Program-made: the position numbers and the translations under genes
From: Perkinsus chesapeaki ATCC PRA-425
Lineage: Eukaryota > Protista > Perkinsozoa
Assembly (NCBI GenBank): GCA_013115145.1
Contig: JAAPAO010000307.1
Location: 1 to 40,936 of the forward strand
Direction: 5' to 3'
DNA: 40,936 nucleotides
Part shown: in pieces, positions 6,008 through 35,891 of the stretch
Layout of the letters: every line of letters begins with the position of its first letter
How positions within the stretch are numbered: position 1 is the stretch's first letter
The notes under the pieces: model-generated
Databases searched by the model: none
What the model was told of the DNA's origin: nothing
The model's input: the letters and a program-made list of their open reading frames with translations, nothing else

Positions 6008-6016
6008 ACGCATGCG
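6008..6016 (-). promoter_or_regulatory. Conserved upstream motif (CGCATGCGT on the coding strand) of paralog A
   Basis: ACGCATGCG on + lies 64-72 nt upstream of ATG 5944; the same core occurs at a similar distance before the other paralogs. Confidence 0.5.
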
Positions 6017-6252: not shown

Positions 6253-6297
6253 GTATTAGTCTAATACCACGCAGTCTGCGTGGTATTAGGCTAATAC
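6253..6297. repeat. Three abutting 15-bp palindromes forming one 45-bp palindrome
   Basis: GTATTAG-T-CTAATAC, CACGCAG-T-CTGCGTG and GTATTAG-G-CTAATAC read directly from the sequence. Confidence 0.95.
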
Positions 6298-7589
6298 CGT
6301 GAGAGACGCAGTTATAGCGATGTCCCGGGGGACTGTTATAGCCTTTACCCGAATATTGTATGTAGTGCATATTCGCGATGCACTTTTTGTAGCTCTGGAT
6401 TCCAGAAATGTTCAACCTCACCTTTCCCTAAGGGAAATGCCCTTGCTAAAGAGTAGATTTGAAGAGTGCAGAATAAATGAAGTATGGGTGGATAAACACC
6501 TCTACATGGGGACAAAGAGAATCACTAGACTCTCGTGACTAGAGTGGATCCAGACTGGGCACTGCGGGCTACAAAGTTCTTTGCAAAACTCCCCGTTTTT
6601 GTCATTACCGTTGTTTGGGGCATGCCGCTCTCCCCAGCTTTGCATTCCCCGGCCTTGTCTTCTCATTGCAAGCCGCAAACGAAGCAAATTCAGATGAATT
6701 TGATTGGCGCTCAGACCTTCGTCTTACCCCTTGTATGGGGACAACTCGTGGAGCGAACCTTGTTGGGGCGCTGGATAGCCTCAAGTCTGAATGTTACAAC
6801 GGCTCGTGCTCTTTGGCTCTTTGGTAGACACCGAAAATCGAGATGGGCAGCTACACCGATACCGCAACAAATTTCGCTCCCGGATCGGCTACAGTACGCA
6901 TGCATATTTTCTCTATTATTAAGACCGAAACTGTTCTCTGATCCTCGACCCACGTTAAAAGCATCAAGTTGGGGGATTTCGAAAAACTCCGCTGATCAAG
7001 TTATTGAGTGATGAATTTGTGTACCTTGGGGCAAGGATGGTCAATAAGGTAGATATACTGCGATGGCGCTATTATGCAGTAAGCTCGCAGCAATGCCTAA
7101 AAGAAATTATCAAAATGCTCCGGACCGTGTAACACTATGGATTGGATCAGAAGTGAGTGGTATCTCCTTGGAATTGAAGACTCTTGAAAGAGATTACCTC
7201 AATTTCTGCTCATAATGCCTACAAGTGGCGACGGGGGAAACGACTTCTACGCTATGGTTATTATTGACAACACGATTCCTCTAGAAAACTGGGGAAACTA
7301 TGCATCAACTAGAATCAATGATATCTAGAAGAGCAGTAGCCGTATAGTGTTATAGAAATCATCTGCCGCAGACTAAGAACGTCTGCGCGGTAACCATTTC
7401 CACGCAGAAGCGCGAAAGATTCACGGTAGGAGAAAAACCGATAAAGAAGAATCATGTGCAGCTGCTTCCAAGACTTGCTTCTAGCACTCTTCATTGGTGA
7501 TATACTTACCGATGCCACCTCAGCGGTACTACTAGAAAAATCACATATTAACAGCTGTTAGCGCATCGGCCTTACTTAGAGCCTAAGGA

Positions 7590-8330
7590 TCATATTTTAC
7601 TTAACACATAACGTCTCCCACTTAAGACAATGAAGATCGTTAACTCATCTGCGAAGACAACGTTGGTAAGGTCACCTGGGCTCACAGGAGTCCCCGGACA
7701 GGCAAGCCTGATATCACGCTTCAGCTTCTCAACATTATGTAGGGGAGCCAACTTGTAGGACTTGTACTTCAAGGACTTTTCGTCCTCAGTCAGAGTGAAC
7801 AATACCGTAGGAGATGCAATATCAGTGCATATAAATTGTACATCAAGTTCACCGTTAGAATAAACGGTGTAGCTTATATGGAGAGTTGGGAACGGGAACT
7901 CGCCTAACTTATAGACAAACCTCCCCGCTTGTAATGTGTGTCCCTGTCTTATCAAGTCCACTCTTTTACCACCAAGCATGACATACAGAGTATCCCCAGT
8001 GGTGTATGTCAAAGTTGTCAAGTCTCCATTTCGAATGACAATATCTGGGTAAACTGAACGTATTCCCATGTACCAGTGATGGACTCCTTCGAATGTACCG
8101 TTGAAATTGACGGCATAGGTGCCTCCACCTTGGTGAGTAAGAGGGTAGTAACCATCAATGAAATGCTTGGTCGGGGTATCAAAGATTAGTCCGACGGTCT
8201 TATCCGAGAAGACATCGAATGCCAAACGATACTTCCTACCCTCAGCGTGGACGTATCTGCCAATCGACTGGGCAACGGCGCCGGTGAGAGCTTGGATAGA
8301 GAAGACCAACCAAGTAGTGGAGAATCTCAT
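7590..8330 (-). CDS. Secreted two-domain family paralog B (246 aa, intact, intronless, signal peptide)
   Basis: Single ORF starting MRFSTTWLVFSIQALTGAVAQSIGRY. Two internal repeats each start GR[YF]V[HY] and contain GDLT; the C-terminal half has a conserved Cys pair. Homologous to four other loci in the window. Confidence 0.9.
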   Translation of the reverse strand: MRFSTTWLVFSIQALTGAVAQSIGRYVHAEGRKYRLAFDVFSDKTVGLIFDTPTKHFIDGYYPLTHQGGGTYAVNFNGTFEGVHHWYMGIRSVYPDIVIRNGDLTTLTYTTGDTLYVMLGGKRVDLIRQGHTLQAGRFVYKLGEFPFPTLHISYTVYSNGELDVQFICTDIASPTVLFTLTEDEKSLKYKSYKLAPLHNVEKLKRDIRLACPGTPVSPGDLTNVVFADELTIFIVLSGRRYVLSKI

Positions 8331-8403
8331 CTTTGCAGAGAATGGGCTATTCTGAGTAACTACAATATCCCGTTCACCGAATGTTCTCTCGCAGCTGCTA
8401 TGA

Positions 8404-8413
8404 ACGCATGCGT
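8404..8413 (-). promoter_or_regulatory. Conserved upstream palindromic motif ACGCATGCGT of paralog B
   Basis: Located 74-83 nt upstream of ATG 8330. Confidence 0.5.
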
Positions 8414-10598
8414 TATTTTCCGTGATGAAATAGGCCTCTGAATGGAGCCTCTATTACACAAAATCGTATAGTTATCGTTTTTGTTACTGGTACCATGTTA
8501 TGCGTCAAGCGTTGATATGGGGCCGTCGTACATGACTAGAGTTCCCGCCGTGTGGTCGACTCTTCGGCCTGCGCTCCTCCATGTACATTGATAATGCAAG
8601 AACACTTTATAGTTTTGTTATATAGCGCACAACGCCCTGTCGAAAAGATGTTGTGAGGGTCGCTGCGGTCCATGGCACATGGAGCTGGACACGGGTCCCG
8701 TGTCGAGGGATCTTACACAAGGGCCTAGCGTTGGGACCTAAAGACTGCCATGATTGAAGTTCATGAAGTGACCTACTAATCTCCCGATTTTCACTTAGTC
8801 TAAATATTTACAATCAGTGAAAGTCGGAGATATTGGACTCCAGTAATTGGAGAGCAGAAGTGGAAGTATCGCCATGCGTACTACAGATGCTTACCGGTAG
8901 CTCAACAACGTAGGTAGAGCCGAGCTTCGGTTGCCGAAGCACCCTTCACTAAAGGGCCTTCAGAAGGAGTTGAGGTCAACACTGGGTTTTCCGGTAACGG
9001 CACCTGTCCGATCGTTGTGCCCCACAACTTATTTCTGTGTTGTGCTAAGTGTCCTTGCATCCAGCTAGTGGACTCGGTCCATAGCTCATTCGTGGTATAA
9101 GTTCTTTAAGCTTCCGCGGTATCGACCTCATCACCTACGAACCACTAGCGAAGTGCAGGGAGAGTCTGTGCCTGCTTAGTTGTGCATTGTGTATTTTGCG
9201 CGAATGTGCCCCTGGGCGAGCGAGGTTCCTGATGGGAATCCTTCCCCAATGGAAAGTTGTGAAGGTGCGCCTTTGCAATAACTGAAGAGCTTGTGGTGTT
9301 TACTCCGGGTTTACACACTGAGGCTCGTCTCAGCTTGGAAATTTCGAGGAAATCTGACTTCCATTTTTTCTCTATCGGGAGGAGCCTGGTTTGTGACTCA
9401 TAGTTGGCTGGGCAAACTTGGCTCTCTACGTAGATTGTAGTGAGTACGAGTCACTAACTGGGCTCGGCTTCGGTGTTGTCACTGGCAGCCTATAGAGAGG
9501 TAATCCCAAACTTCAGAGGCTGTCTTGCCAAACAAGACATGCCGCCATCCGGCTGTCGGTAAACACCTTCGCCGGGCGAAGTTCGCCCTCTTCGCACCCT
9601 CCCGAAAAGATAGCGACTTACCTGATTCCTACGAGCCAGTAAGAAGCCATACGGACGTAAGGAAACTCTAGGAATTTGATCTTTGGGCTCCCTACCACCT
9701 GCGGAATTGATTGGCATGCTTCATTAAGCCACCAAATTTTTCGCACCCTATCTTTCGCAAATGCTACACGAGAAATACACTATTCCAGAGAAGGGGTTAC
9801 TATAGCCCGACCGAAACATCGTCTCTGGACTATGCCGAGGTTCGTTGAGTGAACTCCGGGACCTAGCGCTTTCTCGAATGGTAAACTGAAGTCAAGAAAG
9901 CTTTACTTTTCGCAGCGCCCGTGGGTTGACAACCTCAGGAGTAAAGCTACAGATGATTGATAATTGACATGTGAGTGCTTTAGCAGCACTGCTAACCTGT
10001 CCGACAATAGGTATTCTTCGTGCCTTGTATCGCTCGGTTCTGGTTACGCCTCGGGACGCCTAGAACGTCTGATCGCGCTCAAGAAGATCATGCTCTCAGC
10101 TAAGGACTCCCGAGTGACGGGGAATGGTGAATTCTAACTGTCGAAGGTAGCTCTTGGTTATTTCCGCGATTGTGAAAAGTAGGCAAGAGAAGTGGCACGG
10201 GGGGCGAGGATCTCTCAATTACTATATAGAGCGTTCTTGAGTCTAGACAAAGGTCAAATCTTGCCCTGAGGGTCTCCCTATCGTCACCTGTTCAAAATCA
10301 AGCATGACTGAGGTCGACTGCGGAACCAATCCATTAGCATTGACAACACAATCTCCTAATGAAGTTGAAAGGACTATGCGTTTTCCTGATTCATCGACAC
10401 CTAAGGTAGCAGCCGCATTGCGCAACTGGCAAAGAGTACCATGGGCATTCGTACGCCATAGGAAAACTTAGTGTTCACCCTACGGTAATGAAAGCCTCCA
10501 CTGGTAGAGACAACGGACAAAAAATGCGAGTTAAAAAACAAAGCCGAATAATAATCTAGACTTTGGCAGCGCTTGTACACGACCATGATAGCAAAATC

Positions 10599-11327
10599 TC
10601 ACTCTATTTTTTTCAGGCGAAAGAGCCTGTTCTCAAGGACGATCAAAACTGTGCTCAGCGTAGCAAAGCCGACCTCGCGTAGATCGTAAGGTTCCACGGG
10701 AAGCCACGGGCACATGTGCTTGACCTTCCTTCTCAGCTCTTCAATTTTGCTAGGAGGCTCCAAATTGTAGGCGTTGTCCGCCGATTGAGTGAGACCGAAA
10801 GACATAGTCGACATCTGACTGTGGAAGCATTCAAACTGCACGTCAAGGAGGCCTTCAGCATGAATGGTATAGTTTATGCGGAGAAAAGGACTGGAGCCTT
10901 CTACGTACATAAATTTGCCCGCCACCAATGGGAATCCGTACCCATACAAATCCAGCTTTTTTCCTTCGAACCCAACAGTCAGGAACCCATATGGTGAGTA
11001 CGTGAAGTTTGTCAAGTCGCCATCTCGAAAGAAAACATCGGGAGCGATACGCTTTATTTCTCTGTACCACAATCTCACGCCTTCGACTGTACCGGTAAAG
11101 TTGATGAAGTAGTTACTCGAACCTTGGTCGATAAGTGGATAACGGCCATCAATGAAGTGTTCGGTACGGGTATCGAAGATGATAGCAACACTCTTATCGT
11201 CATATACATCAAATCCCAAACGATATCTTCCCTCTTTCTGGGTATACAGGAACCTACCCGCTGGCTGCGCTACAGCAGTGATGAGGATATTGGCAGCTAT
11301 CACCGACCAAGTAGACGAGAATTTCAT
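10599..11327 (-). CDS. Secreted two-domain family paralog C (242 aa, intact, intronless, signal peptide)
   Basis: Single ORF MKFSSTWSVIAANILITAVAQPAGRFLY...GDLTNFTY...FECF...MCPW...; colinear with paralog B. Confidence 0.9.
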   Translation of the reverse strand: MKFSSTWSVIAANILITAVAQPAGRFLYTQKEGRYRLGFDVYDDKSVAIIFDTRTEHFIDGRYPLIDQGSSNYFINFTGTVEGVRLWYREIKRIAPDVFFRDGDLTNFTYSPYGFLTVGFEGKKLDLYGYGFPLVAGKFMYVEGSSPFLRINYTIHAEGLLDVQFECFHSQMSTMSFGLTQSADNAYNLEPPSKIEELRRKVKHMCPWLPVEPYDLREVGFATLSTVLIVLENRLFRLKKIE

Positions 11328-11383
11328 TTATGCGAAAATGAATACAATTTGCTTCTAACAGATTGCTGTTAAAGCCGGCTGGC

Positions 11384-11392
11384 ACGCATGCG
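11384..11392 (-). promoter_or_regulatory. Conserved upstream motif (CGCATGCGT on the coding strand) of paralog C
   Basis: ACGCATGCG on + lies 57-65 nt upstream of ATG 11327. Confidence 0.5.
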
Positions 11393-12606
11393 CTCTTTCA
11401 TTGGAGTTCCCAGGCGCCCCGAGTCGTCAGGGACACTCCTTCCCCTTACTCTTTTTCGTGGTGCTCAAGGACACCGACTTGTTGCAAAGGCTCCAACGGT
11501 ATAACTCCGGCGCAAGGCAGGGCTAAAGCCAGAGGGGTTTCGCGAACGCAAGCTTCTAGATGGATTAAGGGGCAGTCTGACCAGCGTGTTATGATAGTGC
11601 CATAAAAGTGTGAGTGACGCGCGCCTTGTCAACAAATGGAATTGGAATAGCGTTTGAACCGGAGGCGTCAGAGAGAGGACCACAATGGGTCCAACTATGT
11701 CATCCCTAGGAGAGCAACAACGGTTTTTCCAGCAAGCACATCGAAAGCCTGCATCGAAGAAGTGGATCTTGATTTCTAATAGAAACTTTCTATCACGCAA
11801 AGCACAGTGCCTTTAGCCCACAGTAGAAGGGGACACGGCGTGGGACCGGTCATAAGATGACGCGACGAAGCCGACAAAGAGACGTGGAGTTGTTATTACC
11901 ATGCTTGTAGCCTTCTTCGTCAGTTAGTTATGCAGCTGGGGGGCGATTCCTGCCATCCGACGGTGATTCAGATACTTGTCATTCCAATATGAGTAATCAT
12001 TGACAGGCAGGCGCCCATCTCTAGACAGTGCTGCTCGCTATAACGCGTCGACATTATATCATCAACTTCTGCGCCGCATTCGCAATAAGCTCCCTAGTCG
12101 CCCATGAAACCCCGGTCCGCTAGCAGATTGTAGTATACCTGAAGGTCTGATATAAGGCCAAGTTCTTGAGATACTTCCTTGATTTAGAATCAGACAGCAT
12201 ATCGAGTGGTTATTCTAGATAGGTCACGAAGATTCTAAGGAGACAGAGCCATCATCGAGCCATGCCGGACCTCAGCCATTCATTTCAACCTGGCACCAAC
12301 ACCACCATACCTTCAACAATAAAAAACAAGGAAAAGATAAGTAGCATATCAATGCTGCCATTGATGGCCTCTCCGATAGGTATCTGTTTAGTTCTGTCTA
12401 CTATGCCAATATGGCCACATTAGTAGTCCCATCATTGGAATGTTAGTAGGCCTTGTTCGTGGCTTCATTAGTATAATTTACTAGTATCATTCTGTGGTGT
12501 AACTGCTCTGATCACTAACTCTGTATCCTGGTTTTTTCCTGGTAATGCCGAGTTAGTTTTTTCCGGAGGCGGATGGGAGTTTGCGTGCTCGGTTGTGCTT
12601 ATTTCC

Positions 12607-13766
12607 ATGCGCATCGTTGGCACTGATAGCGATGAAGAAGGTGAAGTGGATGAAGTCCAAGACCGACAGTACAAGGTAAATTGCTTGAACTAAGCGTGCC
12701 AGCCCTGAACCGTCATTGGAGCCGCTAGGTTATTCTCCTTGGCAATGGTGCCGTTGGTAAGACATCGTTGGCTAACAGATTTTGTGACGACGGTTTCAAC
12801 ACTTCGTACAAGCAGACAATAGGCTTGGATTTCTTCGTCAAGGTCGGTTTGTTCCCCGAAAACCTTGGATACGCATCCTGTATTTTAGCGCCTGGTTCTG
12901 CCGGGCGAAATCAACGTTTGCCTCCAAGTGTGGGATATTGGAGGCCAAAGCATTGGTGGCAACATGATCAGCAGGTACGCGGGGCACAGCGTTCAACAAT
13001 TGAGAAAGGCTTGACTGTTAAACACATTATACAGCCTATACGCTAGTCTTCAATCTCGTTATATATTTGCGCCTTCATGAACTCGTTTTGATTAGGGAAA
13101 TTCTCCGTGGCATTAGGTACATTTATGGCTCGGACGCGGTTGTTCTAGTATACGATATAACAAGCTATCAGAGTTTCCAAGATCTCAATGACTGGCTGAG
13201 ACTTGTTGACAAGTAGATATCAATCATATCATGTTCTTTCTCCTTGAGGTTATGTTCGTATTCTCAGGGCAACTGGCGGTCAAACGGGAGGACAGAAAAG
13301 ACCTCCGTGAGTTGACTAACTGGACACGAACTGTGACTACCGTTTAGATTGCTTTTCCTTATGGGGAACAAGACAGACTTAGATCACATGCGCATGGTCA
13401 AATCCGAGAAGCACAAGGACTTCATCAGGGAGCACAATATGTCACCTGAGCCCTACTTGCCGATCAACTAGAATAATCGGTATTTCAGTAACGGAGGAGC
13501 CTTCCTCGTATCAGCCAAGACTGGGGATGCAGTTGCCACGTCATTGTACCAGGTAGCTGCACGATTGGCCGGGATATCCCTTCAACAGCCCGAAGTCCAA
13601 GTACAAGAAATGTCCTGGGTGGCCCATAGAGCCTTTCGCTCAGGTATACCAGAAGGTTGTTAAGGCCGAGCTTGTAGATCATGCACAGGATGATCCTAGT
13701 CATCCCCATGTCACAGCACAGAGAGAATCTCGTAGCAGCCGTCGTTCTCCTTGTGTGATTCAGTGA
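12607..13766 (+). CDS. RAB28: Rab28 small GTPase (multi-exon)
   Basis: Spliced translation: [36 protein letters not shown]...[38 protein letters not shown].../[20 protein letters not shown].../[10 protein letters not shown].../VSAKTGD.../KVVKAELV...CVIQ*. The [23 protein letters not shown] and VVKA motifs and the single CaaX end are Rab28 signatures. Confidence 0.95.
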
Positions 13767-13989
13767 TGGAGTAATGATTTTGTGTTTGTCAATGCAGAGC
13801 TGCGCTTTCTCCCATGTGTGGTCAAGGAAGTATGCATTTGAAGCTTTCGGAAACGAGAAATATCTCTGGTTATTTCAGTCAAGAAGATTTGACCAAGGTG
13901 ACAATATAAATTAGAGACGCTTCAACTAGCAGAGGCTCCTCTACGCTGCATAACGCCGAGTGTCCTGTGAACTTCGCTGTCTCGGCGTG

Positions 13990-20653: not shown

Positions 20654-21457
20654 GTTTTGCCATGTTACATGAATGAAGCTGCACTTAGATGATCATGATC
20701 TTTTCTTGCACAAACTTGCGTGTTGTGAAAAATGCAAGGAGCATTGATTTTGATGAGTTCAACTTCTCTGCACTGAAAGATTGGCTAGAGCTGGTTATGG
20801 TCGCAGTAACAAACTTAGGATGTTAATTAAATAGTGCAGTTAAAAAGCCTCGGGTGGCGCCGGATGGTGCATACCAGCCCGAACTGAAAGCCATGGAATC
20901 CGTGTCGCGGCACCTTTATAATAAGGGTCTTATTGCCCATATCCAAGGTGCTAGTCGCTGTGTGTCAATAAGGCGACCCCTGACTAAAGGGTTATTACTA
21001 CACTTACAGACTGTAAGTTACAGTACTATTCATTTCCTCGAAGGCGAGTATTATAGAACTCCGAGGTTGCACAAAGCCTTATGAGTTGCGAAGTCGACTA
21101 TTTACAAGTGGTCGGCAAAACGATAACTATCTCCAATTGACAACGCGACATGGGTGCATAGATGGGTGATTAGCCTTCATCGGCTTTTAATAGGATAGAA
21201 TAGATCAGATAACAATGCAAGGAGCATGTACCCAAGAACCACGCCCATTCTACTTGACGTAGACGGTGAAAAAAGTAATGGGATACTGATGCATCTATCT
21301 ATAATCTATCATTTAAACAGAACAAAAGGCTGACAAGTGACCAGAATTCCTAAGCGGTGATTATTATCGTATAAGGCTTATACCATATATGACACCGAAT
21401 CGCTGTCAGCGATAGGAACGTCCAGTCGAGGACAACGGAAGCGCTGCTGCTTCACCT

Positions 21458-22215: not shown

Positions 22216-23322
22216 TGAGCAAATGCACAATTTGTTGCTATCAGTGCTACTGATTCAGTAACCTACGAGTGATCATTAGCTTATGTACATGCGTTCCGAT
22301 TCCCTAATGGCACACGGAGCCGCTGCACCGCCGTGTCTACTTGGCTATGTGGTTGTTGTCTGCGATTCTTGGTCTCGTAGGAGTGACACAGTGAGACAGC
22401 TGTCGTCACGGTCAGTCCAGTTGAGAGGCGTTGTGTTTAATACTTGGCTTGCAACTAACTCAACGGTAGCTCACCTCACAAATGGAGGGGAAGCATGGGA
22501 CACTGTTCCGGGGACAGGCAGATATATAGCTAGGTTTTCGGGAAGGCCTATACAGTTATATTGCTTCATTTGTGTAAGCTATCTCTCGTATTAATATAAT
22601 ACCACACAACACCAATGTAGTCGTGCCAAAGATATAGGATTACTGAGATTTAAGCTTTCCTATGTGGTTGAGGGAACGGTTTTGCCATACACGAAAGACT
22701 GGAGCCTTGTCGTAGACAAACCCGGAGGAACATGGTGACGTGCGCACCCTGGTTAATTTATCACCCGGGTCACCTTATTTACTGCCTATTACATAACTAT
22801 TAGTATTATATCTGTAGAGATATAATAATACTATCCCACACCGGTCTCAATACTATCATAGTACCATCCAATCAACACGTGGCTGCTATACTGGAGTCTC
22901 CAGACTGGAGATGGGTAGCATGATGCGGCTCAAAGATCCAGCCTGCATCTGGCACCTTCTCATCATAGAGTCTATTGCTTCTTCCCTTGGAAGCCGAAGT
23001 CACGAGCATCACCTTGTAGATTCATCGACTTGTCGGCGACGGACCGACCGTCGCGCTTTACGTGAATAATTGCGAGGTCACAAGTCAGGAAGTCATAATA
23101 AAATACTATGTCCCACGGCCTGTGGCTATACAATATTGACAACGCTATCCAAGTAGCAAGGTAGAAAAACTCTTCGTAAGACTTCTCAACTGAGGCGGGA
23201 CAGGATAGACTCGTTCGGTAGAACATCTACCCATAACATTATATTGCTGGCATTAAGACGCTGATCGAAGACGACGCCGAAACTCTCGGTTGCAGTTTCG
23301 TTATCTGCTAGTATTAGTGATA

Positions 23323-24085: not shown

Positions 24086-24266
24086 TGGGAAAGGACGCAA
24101 TTCTTCTTTGATACCTATCGGTTAAAACCAGCACTACGCTATGCACGTGCGTTACGTTTTAGGCCGATCGAGGGATCCTGGAGCCTACACGCGCCTGGGT
24201 CTCTGTGAACTCCCTATGAATTCGTCGTTTGCTATGGGCAACCATGTAGAAGAGGAGAGCCACTGG

Positions 24267-24289
24267 CTCTGAGCCAGATGATGCTACGG
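24267..24289 (-). other. Degenerate spliced-leader (SL)-like sequence
   Basis: The minus strand reads CCGTAGCATCATCTGGCTCAGAG, versus the Perkinsus/dinoflagellate-type SL ACCGTAGCCATC(T)TGGCTCAAG (recalled from the literature, not looked up). Confidence 0.5.
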
Positions 24290-25044: not shown

Positions 25045-25095
25045 ATTCATGAACACCAATAGCCTATTGCCAATATGCTACTGGTGTTCATGAAT
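25045..25095. repeat. 51-nt quasi-palindrome (25-1-25, two mismatches)
   Basis: attcatgaacacca-a-tagc-c-tattg-C-caata-t-gcta-c-tggtgttcatgaat, centred on 25070. Confidence 0.9.
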
Positions 25096-26387
25096 GTCAT
25101 TGAATGTTTATGAATGCCTAATAAGCATTGCCTATTGGCAATAGGGAGCCGAAGAGTGAAGAGAGGTACAGGAGGACCCCCAGTGGGGATTCCCCACTAT
25201 GGGAAAGCGACTACTAGGCTATCGTGAGACGAGTGGTACAAGTGAATGAAGGGCGCACTTGAACTTCCGGTCTGGAAGGTAAACTGGTGAGCGCCATATC
25301 TCCATTTGATGGTACTCCTTCTGTCTATTATAGGTCTACGAGACAAAGCTCTCTATGAAGCGGTATTGGTCAGCAGTCCCATCAATCGAGGAGTTATCCT
25401 AGGCTATTTCCTGGTTCGGCGGTTCACCCGATCCCCTCCTCCCGGGCGGTTAGCTTGCAAAAGGATTGACTGACTATTCGTTTCACAAAGCAACTGGCTT
25501 ACGGAAAAGGGAACTCGTAACAACACAACTAACACCTTAACACAACTTAACTGACAACTAGTTAATTAGGCTAAGGCTCACTAAGCAACTGCTCGAATAC
25601 ACGCTCAGGCTAGCGGTTCCTCAACTCGCTCGCCCGCTTACCGCACCCGTAAGAATCTCAGGCATCATGCCGGGAGCCATACCGAGTGAACTTAGTCAAC
25701 TACGTCAACCCTCAATATAATTGTGTGAGGGTAATGGAATTCATTATGAACTATTCATAGTGTGTTCACGTTATGAGATGGCCACGCTTCTTGCTACTGT
25801 ACCTGCGTACTGGGAATGTAGCTCAGGCTCGTCGACATTTCAAGTACCAGCTGAGCTGCGGAGTGACCATATCTATAAAATGCAATAGTGCATGCGCCAG
25901 TGGCCTCTCATAGAGCTTACTAAGAGAGCATACAGAACCATAGATCATGGGTTTCCGTCACGTATCCGCCAGAGCCGCTAGAAACAATTAGCGAGGTGCG
26001 AGAACCGGCGGATCTCTGATTGAGCTGGAAGCAGAAGCTTTCTCCATTGGAGAATCTCCAACAACCCCTCACACATGGGCGGGTGGGAGGTCAAAGAAAA
26101 TCGATTGCACGGCAGCTCTTTAGCGACCTAGCAAGCGAGCCTTGTGGAATAAGCCGCGTACATTTCGGTGTAGCGAACAGCAGCCGGGCGGCCCGGCGCG
26201 GGCCACGAGAGTCCGGCCGGATACTCCCCGATTTTACTTCGGCGCATTTCGTTTATCGTACTATAAAATGAGCCAAAGAACTTTCCTCGCTTTTTTTCGA
26301 AAAAGCGAGCATAGTCAGGGATAGGAAGGAGATATCTTTGTTCTGCGGCACCGTAATTTGCAAGTCCCGTATTTATATTTCAAAGTT

Positions 26388-26978: not shown

Positions 26979-27291
26979 GGCACTGACCTTCTTTCATGCG
27001 ACATACGAAGTGTTTGAATCGAACGTGTGTGGCGTAGTGTTAGGAGACTATTGTCTAGCTACTCTGTTATTTTCGCTGTAACCCTACATCGAAAAAGTTT
27101 ACGGGTTAAATTACTTCCTCCGCCGATATGGATGGCAGTGGCCGGGCCACCGTGGCCCCCACTGAGTGGGGTACCACCAGTTGGCGTGCAGAAGGCGGCA
27201 GCTTCGACACAACAGTATCCGTCCAGCTTCTAAATGAATTGTACGAGTCGTACAGTACGACTGCTGAATATAATCATCGTATTATTGTATA

Positions 27292-27363
27292 GGGCGTGTG
27301 GTGTAGAGGTATCACGTCTGCTTTGCATGCAGAAGGCCCCGAGTTCAATTCTCGGCACGTCCA
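27292..27363 (+). tRNA. trnA-UGC: tRNA-Ala (anticodon UGC)
   Basis: 72-nt cloverleaf: acceptor GGGCGTG/CACGTCC with the G3:U70 alanine identity pair, anticodon arm TCTGC-TTTGCAT-GCAGA, T arm CCGAG-TTCAATT-CTCGG, discriminator A. Confidence 0.97.
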
Positions 27364-27783
27364 CGTTAATATGCACCGTGGCATATAACACTTTGTGACT
27401 TGCGACTTGCCTGTGGGCGAGCGCCATCTTGCCGGCTTCCGCGCCCGCCCTTACCGTCACTACTGGCCTCATTGGCATCAACGCTGACCGTCATAGTACA
27501 CCGTCCTGATATATTGCCATATCGTTCGGACGGCGGGCCGCGCTGCTCTCCTCGCAGAGTCTAACTAAAACTAAGCTTGATCGGTGCATTCTTTATAGAG
27601 TGCTCCACACAACTATGTATTAGCTTCCATGTTGTGGTGTCTTTTTCATCGATAGTCCTTCGACGTTACTTCAGTATAGTCCAATAATGTAGTTACTGGA
27701 ATCCAAATCAGCAGACGTGGCTGGAGTCAGCTACTAACGGCAGTGATTCTGGCAGTCATACTTTGTTACCCAGTTTTCACAGT

Positions 27784-30700
27784 ATGAAGACCTCATCGAA
27801 CAGGACGGCCTTCATAGCGTTCGCTCCAGAAGGGGCATCCTCGCCTGACCGAAGGAATGTATTGGCAATGGGAGGAGCTACCTCTGGTGGGCTCAAACTC
27901 GGTGTAATTGGGTAACCTTGCGACTTTTGTGGTGCAGGTATCAGCGGCAATGATTTTTCAACTAATACCAAGCTAGAGTTCGCCAAGATGGATCTTGGGA
28001 GTAACGACGCAGAGATGCCGGTAGTAACGGCGGGCTCGGGAGTACTGTTGTCGAACAGTAGGGTCTCGTAGATACTAGCGTCAATCGATCTGGAGTCTCC
28101 TTTCCATTCGCTTGACTGGGGCACCTTTCCGGATTCATCCAAGCTCCCCATGGGCATCCTTGCTGGCGGTTTAGGAGATGGTAAAGCGTCATGAAACAGC
28201 AGTTGGTGATGGGTTATCAGGCACGGTGCGTCTTTGGGATCCATCAGCAATATTGGACGGGGGTGGCAGAGAGCATGGGACTTTGAATGAAATGCAGCTC
28301 CATAATGGCATGCCCACTACAGCAGTAAGAGCGACACCAATGGCATCAGGAGTTCACTACCTATCATGTACAGTTGCAATTTCATCCGGCCAAGCCTGGT
28401 CTGATTGGCTCTGGTGGGGCTGATGGAGAGGTTAATATCATTAGTTGTGACAATCCCCGAAATCCCAGTGTTTTCAAACCAACTCATGGTCCGAATAAGC
28501 ACGCGGGTAAGGGGGCGAGTTGGTGGTACACGTAATGTTGATAATGGTGTGCGTCGGCAGGTACTGAGGTCACCTGTCTAGACTGGAATCGGAAGGTCCA
28601 GCATATTTTGGCCACAGCTAGTGGTAAGTAGTTGGGGTCGGTTAGCGGTCATTGCAGAGGATTATTAGGCACTAACGGGTTGACGGTCGTATGGGATTTA
28701 AAGTCCAAGAAGGAGGTTATTGGCTTTAGAGATCCCGGCAACAGAACTAGGTAAAATGGCCAAGTGTGATGAGGAGGGTTTAATGCATTGTACATGGTAG
28801 GGTGTCGAGCTTGCTGTGGCACCCTGATATCCCCACCCAACTGCTCGTGGCATACAATGATGATAACAATCCGACTGTCCAGTTTTGGGACCTTCGAAAT
28901 TGTCGGTATCCGTTCAAGGAGACCTCAGGCCACACTAAGGTGGGTTATTGATGGGTAAGTGGTTGAGCTACATTTTAACTTTAGGGCATCACCTGTGCCT
29001 CCTACTGTCCTCAAGATAGTTCCCTGTTATTAACATCAGGCAGGGACAATAGAAGTGTTGTTTGGCATATGGGCGAGGGACCATCTGTAGCCGCTGGTCA
29101 AGGTGTGCCGAATCAGGATCAGGTAGGAGGAGGATGAGGAGGGGAATGATGGAACTTCAAAGGGATTAAAATGCATATAATCGTTCGGATGGATTAAAAT
29201 GCATATAATCGTTCGGATGGATTAAAATGCATATAATCGTTCGGATGGATCCCTTCTCTTGTATTTATAGTCTGTTTGTTAGTCCTCTTCCTCCTCCTCA
29301 TCAATGGATATCTTTGCCGAGCTCCAATGTACTTCCCCAGCATTCGATGTTGCCTGGAGCCATGCTTCCCCGGGTATAGTAGCTACATCTAACACTAATG
29401 GTAATAACAACAACACCAACTTAGCATTGCCTTGGTCGTCTAGGTAAAGTATGTGTGCAGAGTGTAGCAGCGAGACAGTATGTCACCAATGTGAGGAATC
29501 CACCAAAGTGGCAGAAGGTACGCCTGTTGTTCGTGCTGCTGAGTATGTTGGTTGTCAGGAGCCGGTTGGAGTATCTTTTGGTTTCGCTGGTAAGATGGTG
29601 TCATTTGGCCCAAACAGCACGTAGGGAGGATATGGTCCATGGGAAGAAGTGTTGTATTCAGGGAAGTTAACATTCAAGTGGTTCCCGAGGAGCCGGCGCT
29701 CGTTAAAGAGGCTGATAGGTTTGAGAACTATTTGGCTAGAGGTAGCAAAGGAAGGGACCTGCCGCCGCCGCCGACACCTCGCCCCCCCTCCCCCGGGTTG
29801 ATCTTCTGCCCATCACAGCCTTCGTTCGAATGTAACATCGGTATCTATTATAATAAATACAATATAAATGCTGCATGGCATTGTTGAATGTAGTTTAGTT
29901 ATTAGAATCACGTATGTGGAACAATATCGGTTACTGTCATACCGCTCTTCGGTTTAATCGTGCCTTGAAGGGTGGGCTTTCCTTGCTTTGAGCGCCGCCG
30001 TTGCCATCATCCCACCCTGTAGGTGCGTTGAAGGAGTATTGTGAGGTTAAGATTGATGAGACTAAAGATGATCATGAAAAGCTAAGTTGGGATATTATGT
30101 CGTGTCTCTTTGATGAGGACTATCGGCAGGAGGTAGGGGACGGGTTCCGGAGGAGGAGGAGGAGGAGGAGGAGGAGGAGCGGGGGAGGAGTTAGGATGTT
30201 GATCAGGTTGTGGGGAAGATAGGCATCGATCACAATGATATAGTAAGGGCTGCGGAGCAGTATCTGGGGAGGCCAGTTAAGAGGGATAGGAGCGATAATG
30301 CAATATCAGCCCAAGGTGAGCAAGACAGCAGCACGGTGGAAGGGAAAATTACGTAATTTTTAGGCGGAGCGACGCAGGGGGAGATGGCTGATGGTCAACA
30401 GATGCAGGAGCAACAAGTAGCACCTATGGACTCTGAGCAAGCTGAGAACTTGTTTGATACTCTAGCGAGGTAGTGGTGCATGCTCGATACCAGATGGGCG
30501 GAGGATCGAATCCTGGTGATGCATTTTAGGACTAACGAGGAGTCCGAGCAGCAGCAGGCAGCTGAGCAAGGAGGTGGCGGGTCCTCTGCTGGGGGCCTTC
30601 TCAGCCCAATCGCAGACGTCACTCGTACGGTAAGTTGCTGCATCGGCCCTGACCGGCACTAGTACCTCCCGCTACTGTTCAGGAGACGGATTGGTCTAGT

Positions 30701-33636
30701 GGGGTGGAGCACATTATTAAACAGAGCCTCCTGGTTGGTGACCTTAACGCAGCTGTTGACTGCTGTATGAGGTCTGGCAAATACGCAGATGCATTGCTGT
30801 TGGCATCTGGTGGTGGACAGGACTTATGGCTCAGGACTAGGGATGAGTATATGAGAAGGCAACAGGATCCATTCTTCAGGATGGTAGTGCTAGTCGGGGG
30901 GGAAGATGTCGAAGGGAGGAAAATCGCTGCAGTATTATTGAATTGAATCCTTGCCTTGACGTGTTGCCCCTCGGGGACTATTTGTATTTCGTTTAGCATT
31001 GTCCCTAAGATTTGTAGAGGTTGCCTTGTATCAGGTGTCCTATATTATGACCAATGATATGGATAAACTTGTTGCCACCTCTGACCTTAACACTTGGCAG
31101 GAGACATTAGCGATCCTATGCACCTACGCCAATGAGCAGGAGTAAGGGGACTACAACACACATCTCGATGATCGGTAATCGAACTTGTCCAGGTTTCCAC
31201 AACTTTGCGAGACCCTGGCCCAGCGCCTGGAGAAGGAGCGGTTCGATGTCAGAGCTGCGGTGCTGTGCTATATGATATGCGGCAACTTCACGTAGGGAGT
31301 GTTAGGCAGCGGTTATTATTACGGACACGGTGCTCTCAGGCAAACCGTTCGGATCTGGGCATCGATGTCGACGCCGGGCGCCTCCTCTCAGTCTACCGCA
31401 CTGCAGGACTTGGTTGAAAAGATGGCCGTGATGCAGGTAGATAGGGGAAGGGGTTGTGCTGGTAGAAGGAGAAGTGTTGTCGTTTAGGCGGCAGTGAAGT
31501 ACGAGGGGAAGGACACTATATTTGTTTCTAAAGTGTCGAGGTAGGCGGGCAGAGGAGGAGGAGGTTACAGAGCGTGGCACGGGAATGCTTCTTGAGGGGG
31601 GAATATGCTAATTGGTTCTGGAACACATGATGTAGATACGCGCAGATGTTGGCTAATAGTGGCAGAGTTACGGCAGCTATGAGATATCTCACAATCATCA
31701 AGGATCCCAACGGGGGTAATCCGTGGGTTCGATCCCCGGCAGGGGCATCTTAATGTATTATTCTAGGTAATCAATATCAGCATTCAGCAGCAGCAGCAGG
31801 TCATAACGCGTCGTCTGATATACTAAAGGACCGTAGGGTGGTATAGTGGGCGGCAGATGAGCGGAGATGGATTGCACTCAGGCATTTACAACTCCGCGCC
31901 ACTGGGTGTTATGAACCAGATCGTCCCGACTCCTCCGCCCTTCCCATTCCAGCCAGTATCGCTGCAGCCAGCAGTGCAGCAACAGCAGCCGAGGGGAGGA
32001 ATGATGCAACAACAACAGCAGCATACAGCGACAGGTGCGGGGATCGAACTCGGGTGCATGGGTTATTAGAAGTGAACGGTCAGGTCGGACACCTTATGGC
32101 CAACGCCCCTCCGTATCAGGGTACCAGCCGCAACAGCAGGCAGCTCAGCACCAGGTGAGCATCAAACGACAACGCTGCTGGGGTGATTGGTCATCAGGGT
32201 TATATGAGACCGGTCGCCGGTGGGGCACCAGCCACCCCTGCGGGAGGATACGGCCACGCCAAGCCGCCCATGGGACCCCATGGGGCTCCCAGTGTGGCGT
32301 CGACTGGATATGGAATGAACCAAGGGTAGGATATTGCCTCTCGCTGGTGGTGCTCATTCGAAAGCTTGCAGGCTTGCTGCAGCTCCGTCACCGGTGAATC
32401 GCCAAATGGTGCCACCGCAGCCCACTGGTATGCCGGGCACGATGCCGCCTGGTCGGGGTGTTGGTCAGCAGTCGCCCTATAACGCTCCTGTCGCACCAGC
32501 TGCTCCTTCTGCTCAAAGTGGGTATGGTAATCAGCAAGGAGGGTATCAAGGGCAGCAGCATATAGCGGGGGGATATCCCGCTCAGCAACAACAAGCAGCA
32601 GCAGGAGGAGGAGGAGGCTATGGCGCCCAGCAGCAGCAGTCGGGGTATGGCACACCTGGCAGATATGCTGGGCAGAGGTCCCCAAGGCAACAACAGTATG
32701 GTGGTTATGGTAGTCAGCAATATGGTATGCAACAAGCTGGAGGCATGTCACCAGCGATGAACGGTCCTACAGGGTAGGGAGGGGGGTATTCCAATTGATA
32801 GGTGATGATGATTGTTGTTAGTCAACAACCTATGAGAAGTGGAATGGCTACACCTGTACAGCAGTCAGCAGCAGGACCAATGGGAGGGGGTGCAGCCAGC
32901 ACTAGTAGGCGGGAGAAATAGTATGGCGTTAGTTACATCATCCATATTATAGGGTCCTCTACGGCCCCTCATGCCGCCGCTGTTGCCACCACACCTGGCT
33001 TGCCGGTCAGTTGGCCAGTCCCGACTTCAGTACGGATATCTGCCCTCTATCTGCTAGTTGTACAGTGATTGTCAGGTTCAGCAAGCTGGCTACAGTAACC
33101 CAGCCACTCTGAGCGGCAATCAGGCAGTTGGTGCCCATAGTGCTCCTGTCCAACCCATGGCCCATCCGATGGCCCCGGCTGAGGTGGCTAACTGTCAGAG
33201 GGTAGAAGGAGGAGGAGAGTTATTGCGGACTGCCATGCTTACTTGGGAGCGTTAGGTGCTCAATCAGCTTTTGGAGATCAACTGCCAGGACGGCAACCGA
33301 CGGAAACGTAGGCGAGGTGAAGCGTGGGGGGGAGTATTCGATTCATCAGGGGAGGATCTCACCAAGCGCCTTGATGAGCTTTATACCAAGCTGCAGAGTG
33401 GCGACATCTCAGAGACGGCACAGGAGAAGGTTAAGGAGCTGTGTACGGCTATAGACGCTCAGGACTTCAACGCTGCCAAGAGGATCGTGGTAGGAAGGCT
33501 GTGGGGCTTGCCAGTGGGGACTGCTGTTAATGCTCCTCGGTATTGTTGCTTTGGTCAGACGGATCTTAGTGCTCACGACTGGGACCATAACAAAAACTGG
33601 GTTATGGGTTTGAGGAGATTGATGCCATCTCACTAG
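27784..33636 (+). CDS. SEC31: COPII outer-coat protein Sec31 (many exons)
   Basis: N-terminus MKTSSNRTAFIAFAP...DFSTNTKLEF...LDWG...GILAGGLGDG/TVRLWDPS and WD40 exons (WDLK, VQFWDLRN, VRNPPKW). ACE1 region IKQSLLVGDL.AAVDCC...ADALLLA and WQETLAILCTYA, a Pro/Gln/Gly-rich linker, and C-terminal KRLDELYTKLQSG...HDWDHNKNWVMGLRRL. Confidence 0.95.
29163..29250. repeat. Perfect 28-bp tandem repeat x3 (+4 nt) inside a Sec31 intron
   Basis: Unit ggattaaaatgcatataatcgttcggat at 29163, 29191 and 29219. Confidence 0.97.
30149..30179. repeat. (GGA)n microsatellite in a Sec31 intron
   Basis: About 10 consecutive GGA units. Confidence 0.9.
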
Positions 33637-33800
33637 GCTGCTGCTGATGCTGCCGCTTCCTTTCATAAGTGTTCATTCGGTAGCTGACTGGCGGCGGCGG
33701 CGGCCGACGCTGTTTTATCATACAGTGATGGTAGTCTCAGTGAAGGCATGTTCGGTTGTTGTGTTGAGGGTTATGCGAGTTAATAAAGATTAGTTTAATA

Positions 33801-35430
33801 ATGAGTGAACGGGAAAGGTCGGCTATTGGTCGGCCTAGAAAAGGCTCGAGTGCTGCGCCAGCAGCAGCATCAACTGGCAAGCGGAAGGTGCGTCTCTCCT
33901 GTGAGTTTGAGGCTGTAAGTTGATGCATTTAGGGCGGCGGCGGCAACGATCCGTCACCGTCCGGTAGCGGCTCGGGTGGCACGCCACCCCCGACTAAAGG
34001 CAGTTTTTTGAGAAGGTCTCCGATGGTTATTAACAATCCTGATAGGGACTGTCAGGAAATGAGCTGGAGTCTGAGGTGGCGCTTGGAGGAGGCCTCTTTC
34101 AGTCGTATCTGATTTCCTGTATCACTGGGACGTGTTGCCATAGTAGCAAGTGGTGGGTACAGGAGCTTCAAGGGGAAGAATGAGGCGGCCACCAGCTTGA
34201 TCTTAAAACATTCCTGAATGTGTGATTGAAAATCTGCTGCTGCTAATGATGAAAATGCACTCATCTGCTCAGCATGTTCTGAGTTGCTGACTCAAGCACT
34301 GTCCTCCTCCTCCTCCTTGATGGCAGATACGTGGACCGAAAGATACAGGTGTCGAATAACAGGCTGGTCGCTACAGGCGATCAGGGCTACTCCACAGTAC
34401 CCGCTGGTAACTGCCGTTGATAGTTCAGTACACTAGTAGCAGGTATTGGCAACCCATGGTGCCAGCAGTGGCAGCTGGTACTATGAACTAACGTTCGTTG
34501 GGGCCTCGGCTGGGTCGAGGCACGGGCCATCGGCGAGGATGGAGCCTCATATTAGAATTGGATGGTCTACGCGGATGACACGGTATGACATGCCTCTCGG
34601 CAGCGACTGCTTCTCGTTTGCTATGCGTGATATTGATGGGAGCAAGATAGTAAGTGAATGGCTAGGGCTCACTGATGATGATAGGGTTGTTGCTGTGCAG
34701 GTGGTGGCTCGGAGGATACCGTATGGGCGGAGGAGGATACTGCCGGGAGATACGGTAAGGAAATGCCTTATCCCATTCTACAGTACACAAAAGTCGTCAA
34801 ATTTCATTCTTGTTCTCTTCCACCGGCGTACATCTCAGATAGGATGCCACTTGTACATTCGAGATGCCCCTAAAGCCCCTTTACGATGCGACGATGGTCG
34901 ACCAGAGAGCTCCCTATGGCTGACTGGTAGACAGTCACTCCTGTCTTTGCTGCTGCTGGTGCTGCCTTATTAGTTCGCCAGGCTTGTTATGTGATCCTGA
35001 GGACCCCCCTATCCCAAGTATATCGGAAGGGTCCAGTATATCCTATTCGGTGAATGGTGATAGCTTAGGTGTAGCCTTTGAAGATGTTGTTGAGGGAGAG
35101 TACGCTATTTTACATAATCAACGCCAGTGCTCTTCGGTTAGGTATTTCCCGGCGGTTTCATTATACGGTGGTGCGGTGGTCGAAGCCAACTTCGGTCCCG
35201 CCTTCAAGTGTCCTCCACCAGAAGGAGCCCGGCCATGTTCCGAGATGTACTGTAACGTCGACTGGTGTGGATTGATGTGGAGAGTCAGGTTTGTTGCTGA
35301 TGATGGTGCCCCTCCTCTACGACCGGCACATTACATTCCAAGAGGGGCGACATCAGAGACCAAACTGGCGGCTTCAGAGATGATATTGTCAAGTCCGAAG
35401 GTGGAGGATTCGGCTATATCATCATTTTAA
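33801..35430 (+). CDS. ASH2L: ASH2L/Bre2-like SPRY-domain protein (COMPASS subunit homolog), multi-exon
   Basis: DRKIQVSNNRLVATGDQGYST/VLATHGASSGSWYYE, IRIGWS...MPLGSDCFSFAMRDIDGSK and YFPAVSLYGGAVVEANFGPAFKCPP parallel the ASH2L SPRY motifs (GYSMVRASHG, GWS..PLG.D.FSY, YFPAISLY...NFGP.FKYPP). The N-terminus has a GRPRK AT-hook-like motif. Confidence 0.85.
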
Positions 35431-35891
35431 TGTGCATGATGAGTTTCTAGAAGTTAATGTTAAGTTGGGTTATACAAATGTAGTGTATGGAGAGATGAAA
35501 GAAGCCGACTCCGTGCCGAGCTCCACACATGCGTACCTGCCAGTACATAGATAATAATTATCTGATCTCGGGGTTACCGATATTCCAAATCACTTCGGCA
35601 ACGTTTCCGTGTTGACTTATCAGTTCTCGATAGTGTTAGGCGCTGAAGCTTGGGTGGGATATTCAAGCCTTTGCAACAGCAAGCCTGCCTAAGTTTGTGG
35701 CTCAGAATCACCCATCTGACATCAGAGCATGCTGACGTGATATTCTAAGCGACTGATTCGGATATTGTTCTTAGTAGCAGCAAGATGAGATGTGTTGCTT
35801 GTTGGAGTGACTTATGTGATATTTCGGTGACACATGCGTCGTTTGAAGGATCTTGGGAGAGGCTTTCCAATACAATTAAAAATATCATTAT

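What the first reader, a model, noticed from the sequence alone, without database searches (positions are those of the whole stretch)
6253..35563. Intergenic enrichment of palindromes with a 1-nt centre, often chained
By eye I found 14 perfect palindromes with >=7-bp arms and a 1-nt centre, all outside identified exons: 6253, 6268, 6283, 8688-8704 (8-1-8), 22897-22911, 25131-25145, 25182-25198 (8-1-8), 26040-26054, 26183-26197, 27144-27158, 27157-27171, 27240-27254, 27246-27262 (8-1-8) and 35549-35563. A uniform-composition expectation is about 40936/4^7 = 2.5 for the whole window. My scan was not exhaustive, especially in exons. Arm sequences differ between sites, so the shared feature is geometry, not sequence. 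Many overlap as X-rc(X)-X chains. Inference: footprints of a DNA-level process such as fold-back template switching, hairpin-opening repair like the inverted duplications left by hAT-type excision, or selected cruciform/structure-specific binding sites. This could be an undescribed genome-wide feature.
Basis: partly seen in the sequence, partly recalled or inferred. Interest (0 to 1): 0.8.

Follow-up and report, generated by a model that had tools for sequence, protein, structure and literature searches.

The report
Uniform 22-base transposon excision scars
The odd palindromes are real and nearly all belong to one fixed 22-base scar (an 8-base site, its mirror copy, then the site again), best read as the mark left each time an hAT-type jumping gene cut itself out of this shellfish parasite's DNA, so the genome keeps a countable record of past jumps.

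Summary
Observation confirmed and sharpened. All 14 listed palindromes exist. An exhaustive scan finds 31 perfect palindromes with a 1-nt centre and arms of 7 or more, against 2.5 expected. Other spacers sit near background. 27 of the 31 belong to one 22-nt unit: t1-t7, reverse complement of t1-t8, t2-t8. The window holds 27 such units at 12 or more of 14 pair constraints (0.1 expected). Only the 8-bp, odd-centre geometry is populated. The centre bases are the complements of the terminal target bases. Inferred targets favour T at position 2 and A at position 7, the Hermes/hobo hAT motif (76/176 in this species, p = 6e-7). In a second contig of the same genome a perfect unit interrupts a Tc1-like transposase, and the two flanking frames abut at Sleeping Beauty residues 161 and 162. 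So a unit is 8 original bases plus 14 inserted ones. Units avoid open frames, cluster in two blocks, fold weakly, and occur in P. chesapeaki (the window), P. olseni and P. marinus. Best reading: hAT-type excision footprints repaired almost always the same way (about 0.8). No hAT element or occupied site was found in the 193 kb examined. This scan had already reported the same scar on other pieces of this genome. No paper describing it was found.

The parts
455..476 (.). 22-nt scar unit, 13/14 constraints; inferred target ATGGCACC
2244..2265 (.). perfect 22-nt scar unit (14/14); target ATTGTGTA
4726..4747 (.). perfect 22-nt scar unit (14/14); target CTGTTCCC
4984..5005 (.). 22-nt scar unit, 13/14; target CAACACAG
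6246..6267 (.). 22-nt scar unit, 13/14; target CCTAATAC; left part of a complex site
6261..6298 (.). complex palindromes with 1-nt centres (14-1-14 centred at 6275, 8-1-8 centred at 6290) adjoining the unit at 6246; not decoded, possibly a long hairpin opening or repeated events
6423..6444 (.). 22-nt scar unit, 13/14; target TTTCCCTT
6523..6544 (.). 22-nt scar unit, 12/14; target CACTAGAG
8689..8710 (.).
8831..8852 (.). 22-nt scar unit, 12/14; target TATTGGAG
8942..8963 (.). 22-nt scar unit, 12/14; target CCCTTCAG
9567..9588 (.). perfect 22-nt scar unit; target CTTCGCCC
11772..11793 (.). 22-nt scar unit, 13/14; target ATTTCTAT
20913..20934 (.). 22-nt scar unit, 12/14; target CCCTTATT
21003..21024 (.). 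perfect 22-nt scar unit; target CTTACAGT
21392..21413 (.). 22-nt scar unit, 13/14; target ACAGCGAT
22240..22261 (.). 22-nt scar unit, 12/14; target ATCAGTAG
22890..22911 (.). 22-nt scar unit, 13/14; target ACTGGAGA
24256..24277 (.). perfect 22-nt scar unit; target AGAGCCAG
25045..25095 (.). long 25-1-25 palindrome (92% complementary, 1-nt centre at 25070) that holds the unit 25056-25077 (12/14); read as a long hairpin opening or a second event on an existing scar
25114..25135 (.). 22-nt scar unit, 12/14; target ATGCCTAT
25131..25145 (.). 7-1-7 palindrome not assigned to a good unit (best 10/14); may be a decayed scar or chance
25176..25197 (.). 22-nt scar unit, 13/14, with weaker zigzag extensions on both sides (25169, 25183)
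25738..25759 (.). 22-nt scar unit, 12/14; target AATTCATA
26040..26061 (.). perfect 22-nt scar unit; target TTCTCCAA
26183..26204 (.). 22-nt scar unit, 13/14; target GCCGGGCC
27137..27158 (.). 22-nt scar unit, 13/14; the younger scar, nested in the first arm of the unit at 27150
27150..27171 (.). older 22-nt scar unit: 12/14 as it stands, 13/14 once the nested unit is collapsed to its 8-nt target
27240..27261 (.). perfect 22-nt scar unit; target TGTACGAC; 30 nt upstream of tRNA-Ala (27292-27364)
35549..35563 (.). lone 7-1-7 palindrome, best unit score 10/14; within the chance expectation of about 2.5 per window

Best explanation
The palindromes are halves of a stereotyped 22-nt excision footprint of a cut-and-paste transposon of the hAT type. 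Step 1 (inferred): an element inserts and duplicates an 8-bp target t1-t8. Step 2 (established hAT chemistry, cited below): on excision each donor flank is sealed into a hairpin whose tip is one unpaired base, the complement of the flank base next to the element. Step 3 (inferred from the product): in Perkinsus both hairpins are opened at least 8 nt from the tip. That leaves 3' tails carrying the inverted target copy. The two tails are complementary over the 8-nt target, so they anneal; flaps are trimmed and gaps filled. The product is t1-t7, rc(t1-t8), t2-t8: 22 nt, a net gain of 14 nt, with two 1-nt-centred palindromes whose centres lie 7 nt apart. The scars are neutral, persist in non-coding DNA and decay by point mutation. 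A cut-and-paste element leaves one scar per jump while its copy number stays flat, so scars can greatly outnumber elements.
For: Shown here. (1) Fixed geometry: only the odd-centre 8-bp model is populated, with 7, 17 and 27 units at 0, <=1 and <=2 broken constraints against 0, 0 and 0.16 expected. Target lengths 5-7 and 9-12 and all even-centre models are at or near background. (2) The centre bases complement the terminal target bases: 26/27 and 21/27 in the window, 87/99 each when pooled. (3) Target bias T2/A7: 24/54 in the window (p = 0.002), 20/38 among the units of the first four extra contigs (derived), 76/176 in P. chesapeaki (p = 6e-7). A central TA occurs in only 1 of 46. (4) A unit is 8 nt plus 14 inserted. 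In L001 the frame upstream of a perfect unit aligns to Sleeping Beauty transposase 5cr4_A, ending at residue 161. The frame downstream, shifted by 14 nt, starts at residue 162. The Leu-Ser codons are present in both outer arms. (5) Nested scar at 27137/27150. (6) 27 of the 31 perfect palindromes lie in units. (7) Units avoid open frames and fold weakly. (8) They occur in three species' assemblies and in read-derived contigs. [quoted passage not shown] Hermes and hobo make 8-bp duplications at nTnnnnAn (PMC10368747, PMC2803484, PMC11226609). TcBuster uses nnnTAnnn (PMC3499496).
Against: No hAT transposase domain, no element with terminal inverted repeats and 8-bp duplications, and no occupied site was found in the window or in about 150 kb of further Perkinsus DNA. 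No allelic empty, occupied or scar polymorphism was seen, though only assembler contigs were available and these hide variants. Published hAT footprints are heterogeneous small indels (PMC3499496, PMC5873905, PMC4423477). The near-uniform product here (20 annealed forms against about 5-7 shorter forms and none longer) therefore needs an unusual repair route that I only infer. The +14-nt proof rests on one locus; a systematic search found no second clean case. The P. marinus units alone (n = 9) do not show the T2/A7 bias (6/18).
Confidence: 0.8

Rival explanations
1. The scars are left by a different mobile element or nuclease that shares the 8-bp staggered target cut and flank-hairpin chemistry. 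Candidates are a Mutator-like element, an undescribed superfamily, or a domesticated hAT-like nuclease, rather than a canonical hAT transposon.
For: No hAT element was found in 193 kb. MULEs also form flank hairpins, and Muta1 has 8-9-bp duplications (PMC5499845). Perkinsus carries unusual DDE elements such as Dada (PMC3706591).
Against: The T2/A7 target bias is the Hermes/hobo motif (PMC10368747, PMC11226609). Only 8 bp is populated, with 1 unit at 9 bp and none at 10-12 bp. Most Muta1 excisions are precise (PMC5499845). Dada makes 6-7-bp duplications (PMC3706591). A nuclease that never inserts cannot create the duplicated outer arms.
Confidence: 0.1
2. Replication errors by fold-back or intra-molecular template switching create short inverted triplications without any transposon.
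For: Template switching can produce X-rc(X)-X arrangements. The scars are net insertions. No element was found.
Against: Template switching predicts a spread of arm lengths and spacers, whereas exactly one geometry is populated. It predicts no nTnnnnAn target bias. It also gives no reason for the centre base to be the complement of the eighth base.
Confidence: 0.05
3. The palindromes are selected functional elements: cruciforms, protein-binding sites or small hairpin RNAs.
For: They are non-coding, clustered near a secreted-protein gene family, and 22 nt long.
Against: The arm sequences are unrelated. Folds are weak, -3 to -6 kcal/mol with z between -1 and -1.9. Units decay by mismatches: 37 perfect, 25 with one and 37 with two. 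One unit disrupts a transposase reading frame. Nothing matches Rfam except a tRNA.
Confidence: 0.02

Closest known systems
Ac/Ds, hobo, Hermes (Ac-clade hAT) excision footprints
   Same: 8-bp target duplication retained. Palindromic P nucleotides centred on the complement of the base that adjoined the element. nTnnnnAn-like target bias. Hairpin intermediates on the donor flanks (PMC5873905, PMC10368747, PMC2803484).
   Different: Known footprints are heterogeneous, with deletions and mostly 0-3 P nucleotides. Long arms are occasional in yeast. Here one product dominates: the complete inverted target copy annealed between the two direct copies. The scars also accumulate to about 0.5 per kb overall and 4-5 per kb of non-open DNA in the rich blocks. 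I found no description of that.
V(D)J coding-joint P nucleotides (RAG, Artemis)
   Same: Hairpin-sealed coding ends opened off-centre, giving short palindromic additions.
   Different: RAG hairpins have no 1-nt offset and there is no target duplication. P runs are 1-4 nt, and joining is by classical end joining with deletions and N additions.
TcBuster and other Buster-clade hAT elements
   Same: 8-bp duplication and hairpin-type footprints (PMC3499496).
   Different: Their target motif is nnnTAnnn. Only 1 of 46 Perkinsus scar targets has a central TA.
Microhomology-mediated precise excision of mPing and MULEs
   Same: The target duplication guides repair of the excision gap by annealing (PMC4561436 title and abstract; PMC5499845).
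   Different: There the direct copies anneal and one copy is lost, which restores the site. Here the inverted copies on opened hairpin tails anneal and 14 nt are gained.

Membership tests
hAT-superfamily excision footprint | 8-bp target-site duplication flanking the excision point | tested here: met
   Only the 8-bp model is populated: 27 units against 0.16 expected. Other lengths from 5 to 12 bp are at or near background. Centres lie exactly 7 nt apart in 12 of 12 perfect chains.
hAT-superfamily excision footprint | Palindromic additions centred on the complement of the flank base that adjoined the element (1-nt hairpin tip) | tested here: met
   Spacer-1 specificity. Even-centre models are empty. 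Centre base equals the complement of the terminal target base in 26/27 and 21/27 in the window, and 87/99 each when pooled. Definition taken from PMC5873905.
hAT-superfamily excision footprint | Target preference nTnnnnAn (Ac/hobo/Hermes clade) | tested here: met
   T2 46/99 and A7 40/99 pooled. P. chesapeaki 76/176, p = 6e-7. The units of the first four extra contigs give 20/38 (derived). Motif taken from PMC10368747, PMC2803484 and PMC11226609.
hAT-superfamily excision footprint | The scar is a net addition to a formerly single-copy target (empty-site logic) | tested here: met
   One locus only: at L001:1542-1563 the flanking frames abut at Sleeping Beauty residues 161 and 162 and the Leu-Ser codons are duplicated. 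Paralogue and cross-species alignments were uninformative.
hAT-superfamily excision footprint | A resident hAT transposase or non-autonomous hAT elements with terminal inverted repeats and 8-bp duplications in the same genome | tested here: inconclusive
   None found in 193 kb: TSD+TIR scans and Pfam on 117 ORFs. Earlier scan notes report hAT relics elsewhere in this genome (s1-221077, s1-242055, s1-218215); I did not check them.
hAT-superfamily excision footprint | Observed excision: the same site seen occupied, empty and scarred among alleles or strains | tested here: inconclusive
   Contigs from two samples are identical to the window over 21350-27300. Contigs drop minor variants, and no raw-read run was offered.
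hAT-superfamily excision footprint | Heterogeneous end-joining spectrum (small deletions, short P runs), as in plants, insects, yeast and human cells | tested here: not met
   The annealed 22-nt form dominates: 20 against about 5-7 independent shorter forms and none longer. This is a difference in host repair, not in transposase chemistry.
Template-switch inverted triplication | Variable arm lengths and switch points set by local microhomology | tested here: not met
   A single geometry is populated.

The most novel reading that the evidence does not exclude
Perkinsus repairs transposase-made hairpin breaks by an almost obligatory route: the hairpin is opened far from its tip and the two inverted 8-nt target copies anneal. 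This may reflect weak or absent classical end joining. Every hAT excision would then write a self-identifying 22-nt record. These records would form a countable, datable archive of transposition. It amounts to about 2% of the DNA in the scar-rich blocks, spans at least three species, is concentrated around secreted-protein gene clusters, and far outnumbers surviving elements.
Probability: 0.45. Interest if true: 0.75.

Novelty: new variant of a known kind. Interest (0 to 1): 0.68.

Why it matters
Excision footprints are normally too small and too varied to recognise without a reference allele, so past cut-and-paste activity is invisible in a single genome. Here the scar identifies itself and gives its own target site. 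Excision events can therefore be counted, their target preference read, and their relative age estimated from arm decay, all from one assembly. The uniform product also points to an unusual way of resolving hairpin-capped breaks in perkinsids, a group with little DNA-repair genetics. That bears on genome editing in these shellfish parasites. Practically, each scar adds 14 nt and can break reading frames or mislead gene models, so annotators of Perkinsus genomes should know about it.

Tried and rejected
(1) Paralogue empty-site test inside the window (4.7-5.9 kb against 6.9-8.4 kb). The flanks next to the units at 4726 and 4984 do not align well enough. (2) Allelic variation in public data. Only assembler contigs were served, and they are identical to the window. 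(3) Orthologous comparison of P. chesapeaki L007 with P. olseni L009. Only coding DNA aligns, at about 75% identity. (4) Occupied sites. Scans for 8-bp duplications plus inverted termini gave only a scar palindrome, a low-complexity pair, the Tc1-like element's own termini, and one chance-level hit whose inverted repeat does not extend. (5) hAT domains in 57 + 60 ORFs: none. (6) A systematic search for further frame-joining scars: none beyond controls. (7) Exact-sequence look-ups of the window's secreted protein failed, and word-indexed homologue searches found almost nothing. The exhaustive search was needed. (8) I first took L001 for a second species. One search showed that the window itself is P. 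chesapeaki, so L001 is the same genome. True cross-species evidence comes from L009 and L010. (9) An apparent strand asymmetry (c1 against c2) in the window disappeared in the pooled set: 12 and 12 failures. (10) The position of the first nick in MULE excision could not be extracted from PMC5499845. (11) Two papers were not held. (12) No data on end-joining genes in Perkinsus.
Full report
OBSERVATION. The window holds 31 perfect palindromes with a 1-nt centre and arms of 7 or more, against 2.5 +/- 1.3 in 60 dinucleotide-preserving shuffles. For arms of 6 or more the figures are 48 against 9.4. Counted without nesting, spacers 0 and 2-11 give 1-7 sites each, near background, so the excess is specific to a single central base.

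ANATOMY. The chained sites have centres exactly 7 nt apart in 12 cases, and no other distance is enriched. Two reflection centres 7 nt apart define a 22-nt unit: t1 W c1 rc(W) c2 W t8, where W is a 6-mer. An example is A TTGTGT t ACACAA t TTGTGT A at 2244-2265. This reads as t1-t7, the reverse complement of t1-t8, then t2-t8. Direct 6-mer repeats peak sharply at offset 14 (32 against 7.5 +/- 2.6).

Scoring the 14 base-pair constraints of the unit gives 7 perfect units, 17 with at most one broken constraint and 27 with at most two. The expectations are 0, 0 and 0.1-0.16. At three broken constraints there are 37 against 1.8. The analogous models for target lengths 5-7 and 9-12, and all models with an even centre, are at or near background.

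Of the 31 perfect palindromes, 27 are halves of such units. The other four match the chance expectation. These are two in the complex site at 6261-6298, plus 25131-25145 and 35549-35563. The observation therefore reduces to one object: a sequence-independent 22-nt inverted triplication of an 8-nt site.

WHAT THE UNIT IS. Three independent lines point to an insertional scar of hAT type.

(a) Centre bases. c1 is the complement of t8 in 26 of 27 units and c2 is the complement of t1 in 21 of 27. Pooled over 99 units the figure is 87 of 99 for each. [quoted passage not shown]

(b) Target motif. The inferred 8-nt targets favour T at position 2 and A at position 7. The counts are 24/54 in the window (p = 0.002), 20/38 among the units of the first four extra contigs (derived), and 76/176 across P. 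chesapeaki (p = 6e-7). nTnnnnAn is the target motif of Hermes and hobo (PMC10368747, PMC2803484, PMC11226609). The Buster-clade motif nnnTAnnn (PMC3499496) is absent: 1 of 46. The hairpin geometry alone does not predict this motif, so it is independent evidence.

(c) A natural empty-site test. In another contig of the same genome (L001) a perfect unit at 1542-1563 lies inside a Tc1-like DDE_3 transposase on the minus strand. The piece upstream of the scar aligns to Sleeping Beauty transposase 5cr4_A residues 121-161 and ends ...VLEWPSL, with one further S. The piece downstream, in the frame displaced by 14 nt, aligns to residues 162-177 (SPDLNPIENYWSLLKR). The Leu-Ser codons occur in both the first and the third arm. 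The 22 nt are therefore 8 original bases plus exactly 14 inserted ones.

A nested case supports repeated events. Collapsing the unit at 27137-27158 to its target raises the overlapping unit at 27150-27171 from 12 to 13 of 14.

MECHANISM (inferred). After insertion with an 8-bp duplication, hAT excision seals each flank into a hairpin with a 1-nt tip. Suppose both hairpins are nicked at least 8 nt from the tip. The resulting 3' tails then carry rc(t1-t8) on the left and t1-t8 on the opposite strand on the right. These are perfectly complementary over 8 nt. Annealing, flap trimming and fill-in give exactly the 22-nt unit.

The window supports an almost uniform outcome. There are 20 annealed forms at one string mismatch or fewer, only about 5-7 independent shorter P-nucleotide forms, and none longer than 22 nt. 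A few longer 1-nt-centred palindromes fit distal hairpin opening or second events: 14-1-14 at 6261-6289 and 25-1-25 at 25045-25095. Broken constraints are about twice as frequent at the outermost pair, centre base against terminal target base (24 against about 12.5 expected, p = 0.006). That is where hAT footprints are known to vary. That Perkinsus favours annealing over classical end joining is my inference; I found no data on its end-joining genes.

DISTRIBUTION. One search identifies the window as Perkinsus chesapeaki contig JAAPAO010000307.1 (GCA_013115145.1). Only 4 of 27 units lie in open frames of 100 codons or more, which cover 49% of the window (p = 2e-4). All 27 lie in two blocks, 1-12 kb and 20.9-27.3 kb, around an intronless secreted-protein gene family. 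None lies in the other 22.5 kb, although that DNA has a similar share outside open frames (p = 2e-10). Together the units add 378 nt.

Seven further P. chesapeaki stretches carry 61 units. A P. olseni contig (L009) carries 2, one of them perfect, against 0.05 expected. A P. marinus ATCC 50983 contig (L010) carries 9, four of them perfect, against 0.15 expected. In all, 99 units in 193 kb comprise 37 perfect, 25 with one broken constraint and 37 with two. That is a range of ages which includes recent events.

Contigs built from reads of two samples carry 21350-27300 with no differences, although both samples may be the source of this DNA. The P. marinus record is a separate assembly of another species. 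An assembly artefact is therefore excluded.

WHAT IS MISSING. I found no hAT transposase domain and no occupied site in the window or in the other loci. I found no polymorphic site and no alignable orthologous intergenic DNA. The paralogue comparison within the window was uninformative. Scars greatly outnumbering elements is what a cut-and-paste element predicts, but the source family remains unidentified in the DNA I examined. Earlier notes of this scan report hAT relics elsewhere in this genome, including a scar whose 14 extra bases break a hAT reading frame. I did not verify those. One of them did prompt the frame test, which I ran on a different locus.

RIVALS. A different hairpin-forming element with an 8-bp stagger cannot be excluded without an occupied site, but the target motif and the strict 8 bp argue for the Ac clade of hAT (0.1). 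Template switching fails to predict the single geometry and the motif (0.05). Selected structures are contradicted by weak folds, unrelated sequences, mutational decay and gene disruption (0.02).

NOVELTY. The chemistry is known. What appears undescribed is the near-uniform product, its density and its presence across three Perkinsus species. Six literature searches found nothing on it, though the library lacks most subscription journals. This scan had already flagged the same scar on other pieces of this genome (s1-225823, s1-232618, s1-218090, s1-234902, s1-234906). I reached the hAT reading before consulting those notes (precedes). They are not independent evidence.

VERDICT. The best explanation is hAT-type excision scars with a stereotyped annealing repair, confidence about 0.8. 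This is a new variant of a known kind; interest 0.68.

Noticed in passing
window 5449-11327 (minus strand): The public annotation fuses three separate intronless paralogues (5449-5877, 7590-8330, 10599-11327) of a ~245-aa secreted-protein family into one 559-aa gene model, with 'introns' spanning scar-rich intergenic DNA (P0002). The exhaustive search finds 78 family members at E <= 0.001. All seven whose contigs I looked up are from P. chesapeaki.
   Followed up: partly
window 1-12000 and 20901-27300, against 12001-20900 and 27301-40936: The scars are strictly regional. All 27 lie in the two blocks around the secreted-protein genes and none in the housekeeping-gene blocks, despite a similar share of DNA outside open frames (p = 2e-10). 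This could reflect insertion preference (chromatin, local hopping) or stronger constraint in compact gene regions.
   Followed up: partly
L001:1204-2281: A ~1.07-kb Tc1-like element (DDE_3) in P. chesapeaki, with termini that begin with the palindromic octamer CTGCGCAG. Its transposase frame is broken by the perfect scar at 1542-1563 and by further frame changes upstream.
   Followed up: partly
window 24617-24652, 25670-25716, 25960-26007, 26199-26241: Short segments (36-48 nt) recur in other contigs of the read sets at high depth, up to about 1,700 against 60-120 for the locus. They are dispersed short repeats of unknown nature and were not identified.
   Followed up: no
window 26039-26061: The perfect scar at 26040-26061 matches a second contig elsewhere in the genome with one difference over 23 nt (record 7). 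This may be the same target sequence scarred twice, or a small duplicated segment.
   Followed up: no
window 29156-29250: Three tandem copies of a 28-nt unit (repeat finder family D4, copies 92% identical). GAG/GGA-rich low-complexity stretches lie at 29.1-32.6 kb.
   Followed up: no
window 4780-5415 and 6980-7798: An old segmental duplication, with offsets of 2200-2428 nt and surviving blocks 75-90% identical. It carries one paralogue pair of the secreted family. The copy at 5449-5877 looks truncated or frame-shifted.
   Followed up: partly
window 27292-27364: A tRNA-Ala(TGC) gene lies 30 nt downstream of a perfect scar. Perkinsus is known to carry Dada transposons that target tRNA genes (PMC3706591). 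No Dada remnant was looked for here.
   Followed up: no
L003:7002, 7879, 12481; L004:9237, 12080-12834: Several perfect or near-perfect scars lie inside the spans of annotated multi-exon genes (MatE, acetyltransferase, CRAL_TRIO), presumably in introns. I did not check whether any annotated intron was called only to skip a scar.
   Followed up: no
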